DNA of 64,000 nucleotides, from assembly GCF_031769215.1 (NCBI RefSeq), contig NW_026781917.1, positions 2,294,001-2,358,000 on the forward strand, written 5' to 3'. The stretch's first letter is position 1, and the number at the start of each line of letters is the position of its first letter. This DNA is from Ylistrum balloti (taxonomy: Eukaryota). The notes beneath the pieces were generated by a model. It was not told the DNA's origin and made no database searches. It was given only the letters and a program-made list of their open reading frames with translations. The position numbers and the translations under genes are program-made. Of this stretch, positions 33,301 to 36,300 are shown piece by piece.

Positions 33301-36300
33301 TTATAAAAATCAAGAGTGTCAGTTGGTTGATCTAGCTCAAATAATAGAGTTGGCTTATTTAAAAGGAAATAGGTTAAAAATATGATGTCTTAATCAATTG
33401 TTATTTATTAGATCAAACAATTTTTCATTACGAAGCCAACTGTGTTTAAAAAAAGTGGATAACGATAGATGAAGAAATATTGAATTAATATGAATATTTA
33501 ATAAAAAATGAAGACCATTTCTGACCTAATGGAAATTAAGGTCATATTAGAAGTTTAAGCTTATCATCCCAATTGTGATGTTACACGTATTAAAATATTT
33601 AAGAAAATGTTGTTTAATCTAAATTCTGACTTTGTTTAGGTACCGTATATGTTGCTGACAAAACCTTCCAAGGTAGAGGGCGCCAGTATCGGCGAGAAAA
33701 AGACACACAAACGAAAACTGTCAGGAGGCGAGGACTTACTCAAATGTTTCCTTCATGTCCACGAGTCATGTGCAGCAGCAAACATGGGAGCCACGCCGAG
33801 GCGTTACATTTCCTTCCTTAATACCTACCAGAAGGTGTACGGTGACAAGAAATCAGGCATTGAGAAAAAACAACAGCATCTTCAGGTAAAACTAGATGTA
33901 TTTATAGTCCTATGAATGCCATTTTCAAAAATTGCAACTCTGAGAACAATTGTTGTCTTTAATATTTGTCTTTTATAATTTTATATCCATATGCAACAAA
34001 ACTACTATATGTGTGTTGACAGGCTGGTGTGTCTAAACTCAATGAAGCAAAACAGTTGGTCGATGAATTGAAGAGGAAGGCTGCTGAACAGAGTATACTT
34101 CTGGCTGAGAAGCAATCAGAAGCTGACTCGGCTCTCCGAGAAATCACTGTTAGCATGCAGGTAAGATGACTGTGATCAACGATCACAATCATAATGTAAG
34201 ATGACATCATGAAGTTGATTACTATCTGTGCATTATTAAAATTCCAAACAAAACTTACAGTGGATGTTACTAAGTTTACGATAAATGAAAAAAAAAAGAA
34301 GATAAATAAGAAAAAAATGTGAAAAATATTTTAAAAATGTTCTTTAATAATTCTTATCAAAATTGATAGTTGTATCATTCATTCCTTAAAATCCGAATTC
34401 ATTTGATTTCAAAAACTTGGAAAAACAACAGTAGTATAGTGAAACTTCTATTAAATAAATTGTTAATAAATAATGGGTGATCCAACACTCCTAATGTAGA
34501 AAAATGCGGTAGTGTCTCCGGGCGGATCCGTGTAGGATTCGATAGAGTTCCTTACTATGGAAACATAAAACAATAAAAAAGGAATCTCCTGATGACGGCC
34601 GCATAGCGGTCGAAACATGTAGACAATGTTCACATGAAGTCTTTGTGGTGTTGAGATTTCTTTTTTATTGTTTTAAATAAATTGTTGTACATTTTAGAAT
34701 GCCAGCGACCAGAAAAATGAGATGGAGGTACTGAAACAACAAGCTGCTGAGGAGGACAAGGTCCTACAGAAACGTAAGAAAGCTATTGATCTAGAGCTAC
34801 AGGAGGTGGAGCCACTTGTTCAATCTGCAAAGAAAGCTGTTGGGAACATAAAGACAGAATCCCTGTCCGAGATTCGATCCCTCAGAGCTCCCCCAGATGT
34901 TATTCGGGATATTCTGGAAGGTGTGCTTCGACTCATGGGCATTTTTGATACATCATGGGTCAGCATGAAAAGGTGAGTATTTCAGTCTGAAAATTTTCTT
35001 ATTTTCAAAATTTAAAGATTTTCATTTGTTTACTCAAAGTGCTTTGTATAAATAAGAATCATTTAAACTATTGATTCAAAGCTTTGATATATATGTTATT
35101 GAAGCATTTACATGACGTAGATTAACATGGTGCCAAAATGACATATTAATGTCACATGACCTACAGCCATGTGAAGAGATTCAGAATAGTGAGAAGTTCA
35201 TGTAAGAAATGTAACTATCCCTGAATTATCTTTTTTTTATGGAACAATTTTTTTTCAGCAATGATTATCAGAATTTTTTTTATTATTTTCATTTCATTTA
35301 GTTTCCTTGCAAAACGAGGAGTCAAGGAAGACATTCAGACGTTTGATGCTCGTAAGATCAACCCTGATATAAGGAAGAGTGTGGAGGAACTCATTAGGAA
35401 AAGCAAAGATTCTTTTGAACCAAAGGTTTGCATTGGTGGCAGGGGAAATAGTTGGCCATAGAACTTGATAAAATACCATATATATCTCTTAAGGGCAATC
35501 CGCCCCCCTCCCCACCTCCCTACACTTGGGTCAGTCATACATTAATTATTTTACAAATTTACTACACATCAGCATTGAATATACATGTACTTCCATTACT
35601 TAGTAAGTAATATATTGATGTTAATTTCGACTCCTGTAAGTAGATGTACATATGTTTGTTTGGTTTGTGTAATCAGATATTTTAATTGTAAATGTCATTG
35701 ATTACCAGAATGCTCGACGTGCCTCTCTAGCTGCCGAACCCCTGGCTGCATGGGTGAAGGCGAATGTCCAGTACTCCTATGTACTGGAGAGGATTGAACC
35801 ACTGGAAACAGAACAGAATGAGCTGCTCAAGTAAGTTGATTCATCAAAAGTGGAAAAAAATGTCGTATTTATATAGAAAAATGATAAATTACCATTCAAA
35901 TGCACATTTTGTTCAAATAATCTGTGTTGGAATTTTTTGCACAAAAAAAATCAGGTCAAGGTTTGTTCTGATGCATTGTAAGGAAACTCTTTTAATTAGA
36001 AGGTATATTTCTCAGTAAAAGGCTGACATCCTTAAGGCCAAATCAGAGCTGTAGAAATCAGCATTATCTGGTATATGATACATCTCATATATTACAAAAC
36101 CCGAAGAGAGATTTATGTGATTATAAAAAGGTACAGGTTAGACTGTACAAGGTAGTGATATAAAAACTGAACTACTGAATTAAAGAAGATGCAAAAAATC
36201 CTAATTTTTGAAGAAGTGTATAACTATCATAATAACAATGATGAAAATATTAACTTTATTTATCTTATAGCGAGTGTAAAACTAGATGTCAGCTTATCAC

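What the first reader, a model, noticed from the sequence alone, without database searches (positions are those of the whole stretch)
34566..34675. Sense-strand hammerhead ribozyme inside DYNC2H1 intron 48, locked by a 23-bp stem
Seen: C-CUGAUGA-C-GGCCGC-AUA-GCGGUC-GAAA-CAUGUA is the hammerhead core, with one extra nucleotide after A9 and a 6-bp stem II. The 23 nt just 5' of the core (34566-34588) pair fully, with one G-U, to 34653-34675. That pairing starts exactly where stem I must start for a GUU cleavage triplet at 34650-34652, with ACAU(34615-18) pairing to GUGU as stem III. A second register is the minimal, dimer-forming form (palindromic ACAUGU, cleavage after GUA 34621), but its stem I is weak (UCUC/GACA). 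Established knowledge: minimal type I hammerheads with palindromic stem III occur in the terminal repeats of Penelope-like retroelements. Inference: GUU|GAG may be a CpG-decayed GUC|GAG. If active, the ribozyme would cut the dynein pre-mRNA co-transcriptionally, 45 nt upstream of the exon 49 acceptor, in the branch-point region. It could therefore affect splicing of the stalk/MTBD exon.
Basis: partly seen in the sequence, partly recalled or inferred. Interest (0 to 1): 0.78.

Follow-up and report, generated by a model that had tools for sequence, protein, structure and literature searches.

The report
Penelope retroelement hammerhead in dynein intron
The hammerhead-ribozyme motif is real, but it is one young, rearranged copy of the tail of a Penelope-like jumping gene that landed 22 bases before a dynein-2 exon in a scallop; such motifs are already known and abundant, and this copy has lost a helix it normally needs.

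Summary
The hammerhead core, the extra C after A9, the 6-bp helix II and the 23-nt inverted repeat are all at the stated coordinates.

It is not a gene-specific ribozyme. Positions 34465-34675 are a single retroelement insertion flanked by a perfect 12-nt target-site duplication. It differs by one base in 212 from other genomic copies.

The family is the 3' end of an endonuclease-bearing Penelope-like element (PLE):
- A GIY-YIG ORF lies about 0.8 kb upstream in longer copies.
- Copies are 5'-truncated at different points.
- Some carry inverted arms.

The genome holds 88 exact matches to the motif, against 1 for the reversed control. Helices I and II covary. This is the known PLE "min-HHR", which has a bulged nucleotide after A9, a long helix II and a palindromic ACAUGU, and works as a dimer.

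The 23-bp stem is the overlap of the inverted and direct arms of the insertion. The inversion replaced the native helix I strand, leaving 2 bp, and there is no second core in the 64 kb.

GUU-GAG is the family consensus, not a CpG-decayed GUC.

The copy is most likely catalytically inert or very slow. It is a new member of a known kind, and interest is low.

The parts
34453..34464 (.). Left copy of the target-site duplication AAATAAATTGTT
   Evidence: Identical 12-mer at 34675-34686. Direct repeat D1 has a spacing of 222.
34465..34588 (-). Inverted arm: reverse complement of the element's 3' tail, starting at the element's 'long' 3' end
   Evidence: 124/124 identical to the tail in L002 and 123/124 to L008 when reverse-complemented. 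Seen in the alignment of copies.
34588..34675 (+). Direct arm: hammerhead unit plus the first 23 nt of the tail, ending at the family's 'short' 3' end (…TTATTGTTTTA)
   Evidence: 87/88 identical to L008 and L002. The same 89-nt unit with its own TSDs is found in L004, L009 and L010.
34589..34596 (+). Hammerhead core C3-A9 (CUGAUGA) plus the unpaired C between A9 and G10.1
   Evidence: The unpaired nucleotide is a stated hallmark of PLE min-HHRs (PMC4209133). It is C in 24 of 30 distinct genomic variants.
34597..34611 (+). Helix II (6 bp, G10.1-C11.1 closing pair) with loop AUA
   Evidence: Pair probability 0.98-1.0. Compensatory variants occur across the genome.
34612..34621 (+). G12 A13 A14, then palindromic ACAUGU (helix III only in a dimer) and A17. 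The native cleavage site would be after 34621.
   Evidence: Invariant GAAACATGT in all aligned copies. H17 is A in 18 and C in 17 of 41 copies.
34622..34627 (+). GACAAU, the 3' strand of native helix I, orphaned in this copy
   Evidence: Intact copies pair it with AAUUGUC just 5' of the core (5-8 bp). The window has only 2 contiguous bp. Covariation of helix I is shown.
34648..34652 (+).
   Evidence: Pairs with ACAU at 34615-18 with probability about 0.15. GTTGAG is the family consensus.
34566..34588 (+). 5' arm of the 23-bp stem (part of the inverted arm)
   Evidence: repeat I1. Mean pair probability 0.99.
34653..34675 (+). 3' arm of the 23-bp stem (start of the tail in the direct arm). The single C>T difference from the family lies here and makes the G.U pair.
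34675..34686 (.). Right copy of the target-site duplication (its first A is ambiguous with the last base of the element)
34696..34898 (+). AG acceptor (34696-97) and the dynein-2 heavy chain stalk exon (from 34698)
   Evidence: phmmer to PDB 4rh7 / 6rla DYNC2H1, E about 1e-15, aligned from residue 2 of the translation. Pfam MT stalk match is weak.

Best explanation
Positions 34465-34675 are one recent insertion of the 3' end of an endonuclease-encoding Penelope-like retroelement (PLE) into an AT-rich site 22 nt upstream of a dynein-2 heavy chain exon. PLE integration often leaves an inverted, 5'-truncated copy next to the direct one. Here the inverted arm (34465-34588) and the direct arm (34588-34675) overlap by 23 nt of element sequence, and that overlap is the '23-bp stem'. 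The direct arm carries the element's own minimal type I hammerhead (min-HHR). That motif has a CUGAUGA core, one unpaired nucleotide, a 6-bp helix II, GAAA and a palindromic ACAUGU. In the element it needs a short helix I with the sequence just upstream, and a second copy to build helix III as a dimer. In this copy the inversion junction replaced the upstream helix I strand, and no partner motif is nearby. The native ribozyme is therefore disabled (inferred). By accident of the junction, the 23-bp stem, ACAU/GUGU and GUU give a second register that obeys the hammerhead rules. It lacks helix I/II tertiary contacts, and I expect at most slow, high-Mg cleavage (inferred). The right-hand TSD preserves the original last 23 nt of the intron. 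The element tail adds a pyrimidine-rich run just upstream. Splicing is therefore probably unaffected (inferred).
For: Repeat family: at least 40 scored copies in the genome. Perfect 12-nt TSD, and arms 124/124 and 87/88 identical to other copies. PLE nature: L006 and L007 are 98.6% identical for 1.6 kb upstream of the motif, while L011, L003 and L008 are 5'-truncated at different points. A GIY-YIG domain lies on the same strand about 0.8 kb upstream (E = 1.3e-7, above the Pfam cut-off). The inverted-arm architecture recurs in L002, L005, L012, L017 and L020. This matches the published PLE structure (PMC8557442) and the in-vitro extension of both DNA strands from two RT start sites (PMC11167929). 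Hammerhead nature: 88 motif matches against 1 for the control. Helix II variants are compensatory. Native helices I and II are 82% paired against 24-51% in slid controls, with 7 pairs changed on both sides and a covariation score above 500/500 shuffles. The unpaired nucleotide after A9, the long helix II, G10.1-C11.1 and the palindromic 15.2-16.2 are the published min-HHR hallmarks (PMC4209133). Loss of helix I: 2 contiguous bp here against 5-8 in intact copies. There is a single core in the 64 kb. Published assays found that a single min-HHR had no detectable cleavage, and that dimers or helix III-extended forms cleaved weakly, mostly at non-physiological Mg.
Against: 'PLE' therefore rests on the GIY-YIG domain, the insertion architecture and the min-HHR. 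The alternative GUU register is within 0.2 kcal/mol of the MFE when enforced, and it reappears in a second, diverged copy with the same junction (L020). Residual activity therefore cannot be excluded by computation. A PLE protein has been reported to assist HHR cleavage (PMC11167929), so in-vivo activity might exceed in-vitro expectations. No expression or cleavage data were available.
Confidence: 0.85

Rival explanations
1. The reader's register is a working monomeric hammerhead. Helix I would be the 23-bp stem, helix III would be ACAU/GUGU closed by a 29-nt loop, and cleavage would follow GUU at 34652. It would cut the dynein-2 pre-mRNA about 45 nt upstream of the acceptor and lower or modulate use of the stalk exon.
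For: All formal rules are met: core, G10.1-C11.1, A15.1-U16.1, H17 = U, and helix I starting at 1.1/2.1. The enforced fold is -41.5 against an MFE of -41.7 kcal/mol, with helix III probability about 0.15. A diverged copy, L020, has the same junction, GUU and a 4-bp ACAU/AUGU. A helix III-extended single min-HHR cleaved in vitro, though weakly.
Against: The register exists only through the insertion junction and is absent from intact family members, whose upstream strand cannot pair with GAGAUUCC. Helix I is a continuous duplex with no loop or bulge to contact loop II, so by established hammerhead knowledge it should behave as a 'minimal' ribozyme needing about 10 mM Mg2+. A competing hairpin (34616-20 with 34632-36, P = 0.27) and a C34596-G34612 pair (P = 0.74) sequester helix III and G12. 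GUU is a poorer triplet than GUC or GUA (established knowledge). An efficient cut in an essential cilia gene would be selected against. The insertion is very young, so its persistence says little either way.
Confidence: 0.08
2. The native register works here after all: cleavage after GUA at 34621, through intermolecular dimerisation via ACAUGU with other element transcripts, or with help from a PLE protein.
For: The core is identical to the family consensus. Dimeric action is the proposed mode for min-HHRs. Protein-assisted PLE HHR cleavage has been reported. Other family copies look young, and intact GIY-YIG ORFs of up to 755 aa exist.
Against: Helix I is reduced to 2 contiguous bp. There is no second core in the 64 kb. 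The 5' strand next to the core is locked in the 23-bp stem with P = 0.99. Published min-HHR activity is low even in dimers.
Confidence: 0.04
3. It is a chance resemblance, not a hammerhead at all, or the hairpin matters as double-stranded RNA (editing or small-RNA source) rather than as a ribozyme.
For: There is no Rfam hammerhead hit, even at E <= 10. Within the window a loose core pattern occurs by chance in 19 of 100 shuffles. The 23-bp stem dominates the fold.
Against: Rfam also misses an intact family copy, so its silence is uninformative for min-HHRs. Genome-wide enrichment is 88 to 1, and helices I and II covary. A 23-bp stem with a 64-nt loop is not a typical miRNA precursor, and the only miRNA hit is noise (15 bits against a gathering score of 144).
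Confidence: 0.03

Closest known systems
Minimal type I hammerheads (min-HHR) of metazoan Penelope-like elements (Cervera & De la Pena 2014, PMC4209133)
   Same: Same core, with one unpaired nucleotide between A9 and G10.1, a long helix II (6-7 bp) closed by G10.1-C11.1, no helix III loop but a palindromic ACAUGU, and a short helix I (5-8 bp in intact copies). There are many heterogeneous genomic copies with compensatory changes. Most copies are solo and some are pairs on opposite strands. The motif is linked to a GIY-YIG-encoding retroelement.
   Different: This particular copy has lost the 5' strand of helix I at an inversion junction, and it has gained a fortuitous alternative register (23-bp helix I, 4-bp helix III, GUU).
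PLE insertion architecture: pseudo-LTRs, adjacent inverted 5'-truncated copy, optional 'tail' (Craig et al. 2021, PMC8557442; Frangieh et al. 2024, PMC11167929)
   Same: TSD-flanked, 5'-truncated, with an inverted arm abutting the direct arm, two alternative 3' ends and an AT-rich target.
   Different: The distance between the two 3' ends is about 102 nt here, rather than the 30-40 bp described. The whole insertion is only 211 nt, with no ORF.
Conserved intronic hammerheads of amniotes (HH9/HH10; Rfam RF02275, RF02277)
   Same: A type I hammerhead lying in the sense strand of an intron of a protein-coding gene, and of retroelement origin.
   Different: Those are canonical ribozymes with helix I/II loop contacts that are conserved across species. 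This one is a very young insertion (1 change in 212 nt) without tertiary-contact loops, and it matches no Rfam model.
Non-LTR retrozymes of animals (Cervera & De la Pena 2020, PMC7229834; Li et al. 2026 preprint, 10.64898/2026.07.22.740005)
   Same: Short non-coding hammerhead-bearing repeats related to PLE terminal regions.
   Different: Retrozymes are tandem arrays with canonical type I hammerheads that give circular RNAs. Here there is a single dispersed copy with a min-HHR. The preprint's abstract reports retrozymes as depleted from introns in vertebrates.
5' inversion of LINE-1 insertions by twin priming
   Same: One TSD-flanked insertion made of an inverted 5' segment joined to a direct 3' segment at a microhomology.
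   Different: The two arms here overlap by 23 nt and start from two different 3' ends of the template. The enzyme is a GIY-YIG/RT element, not an APE-type LINE.

Membership tests
Hammerhead ribozyme (any type) | Conserved core C3 U4 G5 A6 N7 G8 A9 and G12 A13 A14 | tested here: met
   34589-34595 and 34612-34614. These positions are invariant in the aligned copies.
Hammerhead ribozyme (any type) | Helix II closed by G10.1-C11.1, supported by covariation | tested here: met
   6 bp in the window (P >= 0.98). Compensatory variants include GGUCGC/GCGGCC, GGCUAGC/GCUAGUC and GGCCUGC/GCAGGCC.
Hammerhead ribozyme (any type) | A15.1-U16.1 pair followed by H17 (not G) at the cleavage site | tested here: met
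   Native register: A34615...U34620, A34621. Alternative register: A34615-U34651, U34652.
Hammerhead ribozyme (any type) | Helix I formed by the strand 5' of C3 and the strand 3' of H17 | tested here: inconclusive
   Native register: only 2 contiguous bp in the window against 5-8 in intact copies, so not met. Alternative register: 23 bp, so met, but only because of the insertion junction.
Hammerhead ribozyme (any type) | Match to a curated hammerhead covariance model (Rfam) | tested here: not met
   No hit at gathering score or at E <= 10. An intact family copy also fails, so the models do not cover min-HHRs.
Hammerhead ribozyme (any type) | Site-specific self-cleavage | not testable with these tools
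   Needs in vitro transcription and a Mg2+ assay, or RNA end mapping.
PLE min-HHR (Cervera & De la Pena 2014) | One unpaired nucleotide between A9 and G10.1 | tested here: met
   C34596. It is C, U or A in all 30 distinct variants, and no variant pairs better without the bulge.
PLE min-HHR (Cervera & De la Pena 2014) | No helix III hairpin; palindromic 15.2-16.2 allowing a dimer | tested here: met
   ACAUGU at 34615-34620, invariant in the family.
PLE min-HHR (Cervera & De la Pena 2014) | Resides in the terminal or pseudo-LTR region of an RT + GIY-YIG element | tested here: inconclusive
   A GIY-YIG ORF lies about 0.8 kb upstream on the same strand in two 98.6%-identical long copies. The RT region lies beyond the fetched loci and could not be fetched.
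PLE min-HHR (Cervera & De la Pena 2014) | Large heterogeneous genomic family with compensatory changes | tested here: met
   88 exact pattern matches and several consensus families.
Penelope-like element insertion | TSD, variable 5' truncation, adjacent inverted 5'-truncated copy, alternative 3' ends ('tail') | tested here: met
   12-nt TSD. Truncation points are at 984, 1051 and 1333, plus a cluster just 5' of the core. Inverted arms occur in the window, L002, L005, L012, L017 and L020. Short and long 3' ends are seen.
Conserved intronic hammerheads (HH9/HH10 type) | Canonical helix I/II loop-loop contacts and conservation of the intronic copy across species | tested here: not met
   Helix I is an uninterrupted duplex. 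There is no Rfam HH9/HH10 hit. The copy is 99.5% identical to other genomic copies, so it is recent. Cross-species conservation could not be tested.
Non-LTR retrozyme | Tandem head-to-tail repeats each carrying a hammerhead | tested here: not met
   There is a single core in 64 kb, and the copy is a solitary TSD-flanked insertion.

The most novel reading that the evidence does not exclude
The inversion junction of this insertion has rebuilt a complete, monomeric type I hammerhead: 23-bp helix I, 4-bp helix III, GUU cut at 34652. It would be absent from the parent element but would cleave the dynein-2 pre-mRNA just upstream of the branch-point/acceptor region, making carriers of the insertion hypomorphic for, or differently spliced at, the stalk exon. 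A diverged copy (L020) shares the same junction. In addition, at least 6 independent insertions start within 3 nt of C-CUGAUGA. Together these could mean that RNA ends near these positions are produced in the PLE life cycle.
Probability: 0.06. Interest if true: 0.6.

Novelty: new member of a known kind. Interest (0 to 1): 0.22.

Why it matters
As it stands this is routine repeat annotation. It is one more solo Penelope-type hammerhead among at least 88 in this genome, of a class described in 2014.

Two points give it modest value.
- It is a clean, TSD-bounded example of the PLE 'inverted plus direct arm' insertion. The two arms start from two different 3' ends, which fits the recently proposed model of dual-strand extension from internal initiation sites.
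- It shows how such a junction can, by accident, supply a ribozyme core with new helices I and III inside an essential gene's intron.

If the rebuilt form cleaved in vivo, it would be a natural case of a transposon insertion creating a cis-acting ribozyme that competes with splicing.

Tried and rejected
- Rfam at gathering score and at E <= 10 gave no hammerhead hit. I rejected this as evidence against a hammerhead, because an intact family copy is missed too.
- The weak snoRNA, miRNA and Class I RNA hits (E = 2-9, far below their gathering scores) are noise.
- The element tail loosely resembles a tRNA T-arm, so I considered a tRNA-derived SINE. ARAGORN finds no tRNA.
- The junction 17-mer search found only the window and L020 as true family copies. 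The third exact hit (L062) is unrelated sequence, and the 2-mismatch hits are near the control level, 184 against 83.
- A search for an allele or haplotig lacking the insertion, using the upstream flank, found only the window itself.
- CpG decay of GUC to GUU is rejected, because GTTGAG is the consensus in all subfamilies.
- The MAFFT alignment of all variants (A1) misaligns the 7-bp helix II families. I therefore ran the pair counts on 18 gap-free 49-nt copies (A2). I left out the window and the copies whose 5' flank is an insertion junction (L004, L005, L009, L010, L016, L020). I also left out L027, which is 48 nt long.
I did not try another route.
- The large protein searches were not used, because Pfam settled the endonuclease.
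Full report
**1. The observation**

- CUGAUGA lies at 34589-34595, and an extra C at 34596.
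- GGCCGC-AUA-GCGGUC lies at 34597-34611.
- GAAA lies at 34612-34615, followed by CAUGUA ending at 34621.
- The 23 nt at 34566-34588 are 96% complementary to 34653-34675. The one mismatch is a G.U in RNA.

As RNA, 34560-34680 folds at -41.7 kcal/mol (z = -6.7). The fold is dominated by the 23-bp stem and the helix II hairpin. The downstream exon starts at 34698 on the + strand. It aligns to the stalk of human dynein-2 heavy chain in PDB entries 4rh7 and 6rla (E about 1e-15). The motif is therefore in the sense strand of an intron, 45-46 nt upstream of the exon.

I confirmed the gene by homology but not the species. The window is not human. I did not check the intron number.

**2. It is a dispersed repeat, and the window copy is one bounded insertion**

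A search of the window's own 648-Mb genome with 34540-34700 returned 65 matches on many contigs. In the alignment of copies, the family similarity on the right begins at C-CTGATGA. It runs through the core into a 'tail' that many copies continue for about 100 nt more.

The window's left flank, 34465-34588, is the exact reverse complement of that tail. It is 124/124 identical to L002 and 123/124 to L008. The right part, 34588-34675, is 87/88 identical to other copies. The whole is bracketed by a perfect 12-nt direct repeat, AAATAAATTGTT, at 34453-34464 and 34675-34686.

So 34465-34675 is a single, very recent insertion made of an inverted arm and a direct arm. The two arms share 23 nt of element sequence, and that overlap is the 23-bp stem. 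The one base that differs from the family (C>T in the right arm) produces the G.U pair.

**3. The element is the 3' end of a Penelope-like element (PLE)**

- Two long copies, L006 and L007, are 98.6% identical over the full 1.6 kb upstream of the motif.
- L011, L003 and L008 are the same element 5'-truncated at different points.
- L008 is flanked by its own 9-nt duplication.
- About 0.8 kb upstream of the motif, on the same strand, the long copies encode a GIY-YIG endonuclease domain (PF01541, E = 1.3e-7, above the cut-off).
- The genome has at least 51 GIY-YIG matches. These include open frames of 755 aa and a tandem array with a 5.36-kb period.

Insertions made of an inverted arm plus a direct arm recur in independent TSD-flanked copies of several subfamilies: L002, L005, L012, L017 and L020. 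Copies end at one of two 3' ends, a short one (…TTATTGTTTTA) or a long one about 102 nt further on.

These features match published PLE traits. Craig et al. describe 5' truncation, pseudo-LTRs, an adjacent inverted 5'-truncated copy, an optional tail, and hammerheads in the pseudo-LTR (PMC8557442). Frangieh et al. report cleavage and extension of both DNA strands, two internal RT start sites and AT-rich targets (PMC11167929).

I did not see the RT domain.

**4. The motif is the known PLE minimal hammerhead**

The pattern CTGATGA-N13-22-CGAAACATGT occurs 88 times in the genome, against once for the reversed control. The matches fall into several consensus families whose helix II differs by compensatory changes: GGCCGC/GCGGUC, GGUCGC/GCGGCC, GGCUGC/GUGGUC, GGCUAGC/GCUAGUC and GGCCUGC/GCAGGCC. 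All of them have one unpaired nucleotide after A9 and a G10.1-C11.1 pair.

In intact copies the 5-8 nt before the core pair with the nucleotides after GUA or GUC, for example AAUUGUC with GACAAU(U).

I counted pairs on 18 gap-free copies. I left out the window and the copies whose 5' flank is an insertion junction. I also left out L027, which is 48 nt long. The results were:
- Helices I and II are 82% paired, against 24-51% when the partner is slid by 1-3 columns.
- 7 of 14 pairs show changes on both sides.
- The covariation score exceeds all 500 shuffles.

Cervera and De la Pena (PMC4209133) list the hallmarks of metazoan PLE min-HHRs. They are the unpaired nucleotide between 9 and 10.1, a long helix II, the conserved G10.1-C11.1, palindromic 15.2-16.2 with no helix III loop, a short helix I, mostly solo copies, and some pairs on opposite strands. 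All of these are seen here.

Rfam's hammerhead models detect neither the window nor an intact copy. Their silence is therefore uninformative.

**5. What this particular copy can do**

*Native register (cut after A34621).* The inversion junction replaced the upstream helix I strand with …GGAAUCUC, leaving 2 contiguous base pairs. That strand is also held in the 23-bp stem (P = 0.99). No second core exists in the 64-kb window to form the dimer. Published assays found no detectable cleavage by a single min-HHR, and only weak cleavage by dimers. I infer that the native ribozyme is disabled here.

C34588-G34653 is the 2.1-1.1 pair. A15.1-U16.1, C-G, A-U and U.G form helix III, and H17 = U. Enforcing it costs only 0.2 kcal/mol relative to the MFE, and helix III has an ensemble probability of about 0.15.

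Several points weigh against real activity in this register:
- It arises only from where the junction fell. Intact copies have no partner for GAGAUUCC.
- GTTGAG is the consensus in every subfamily, so it is not a decayed GUC.
- Helix I is an uninterrupted duplex without the loop or bulge that gives natural hammerheads activity at cellular Mg2+ (established knowledge).
- A competing hairpin (P = 0.27) and a C34596-G34612 pair (P = 0.74) sequester helix III and G12.

One diverged copy, L020, has the same junction, GUU, and a 4-bp ACAU/AUGU. A genome search for the junction found no further true family copy. I regard the second register as a curiosity that only a bench test can settle. I give it about 8%.

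**6. Effect on the gene (inferred, not shown)**

The insertion lies 22 nt upstream of the AG. The right-hand TSD restores the original last 23 nt of the intron. The element tail supplies a U-rich run just upstream. The 3' splice-site context is therefore largely preserved, which fits a tolerated, neutral and probably recent insertion. No haplotig lacking it is in the assembly.

**7. Verdict**

The feature is a new member of a known kind: a PLE min-HHR in a rearranged solo insertion. It is not a dedicated regulator of DYNC2H1. Interest is low.

The recurring insertion architecture of this PLE family is recorded separately as unexplained. It comprises two 3' ends, a 5' end hot spot at C-CUGAUGA and one shared junction.

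Noticed in passing
L004, L005, L009, L010, L017, L020 and window 34588: At least six independent TSD-flanked insertions of this family begin within 0-3 nt of C-CTGATGA. That is a 5' end hot spot just upstream of the ribozyme core, and it is not at the hammerhead cleavage site. It is unexplained; possible causes are an RNA 5' end, an RT stop or a transcription start.
   Followed up: partly
window 34465-34675; L002:1498-1733; L005; L012; L017:1425-1648; L020:1440-1665: Insertions with an inverted arm always combine one arm that starts at the 'long' 3' end with one that starts at the 'short' 3' end about 102 nt upstream. It looks as if the two DNA strands were each extended from a different RT initiation site. 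The window and L020, from different subfamilies, share exactly the same junction, GGA(A/T)TCTC|CTGATGA.
   Followed up: partly
G000 contig C422, 240415-261997 (not fetched): Five GIY-YIG matches on one strand lie at a regular spacing of about 5.36 kb, four of them in open frames of 755 aa. This is probably a tandem array of intact Penelope-like elements. Contig C129 has two more 755-aa frames.
   Followed up: no
L006:730-1398 and L007:1704-2372 (minus strand): A second open frame of 223 aa lies between the GIY-YIG ORF and the hammerhead. It overlaps the end of the first ORF in another frame and has only a faint C2H2 zinc-finger signal (E about 0.006). It could be a frameshifted continuation or a separate ORF.
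   Followed up: no
L013 (1204-1284 minus, 1501-1581 plus); L015 (1408-1485 minus, 1501-1592 plus); L018; L024: There are head-to-head pairs of hammerhead units on opposite strands, 3-500 nt apart. This is the 'dual min-HHRs on opposite strands' arrangement described for Schistosoma PLEs.
   Followed up: no
window 34653-34697: The element tail places a U-rich run (UUUCUUUUUUAUUGUUUU) directly upstream of the duplicated target site and the AG. The insertion may now contribute to the polypyrimidine tract or branch-point region of this acceptor.
   Followed up: no
G000 contig C414, 980465-980973 (L064-L068): The 17-mer AGGAATCTCCTGATGTC recurs five times within 500 nt. This is an unrelated short tandem or dispersed repeat picked up by the junction search.
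   Followed up: no
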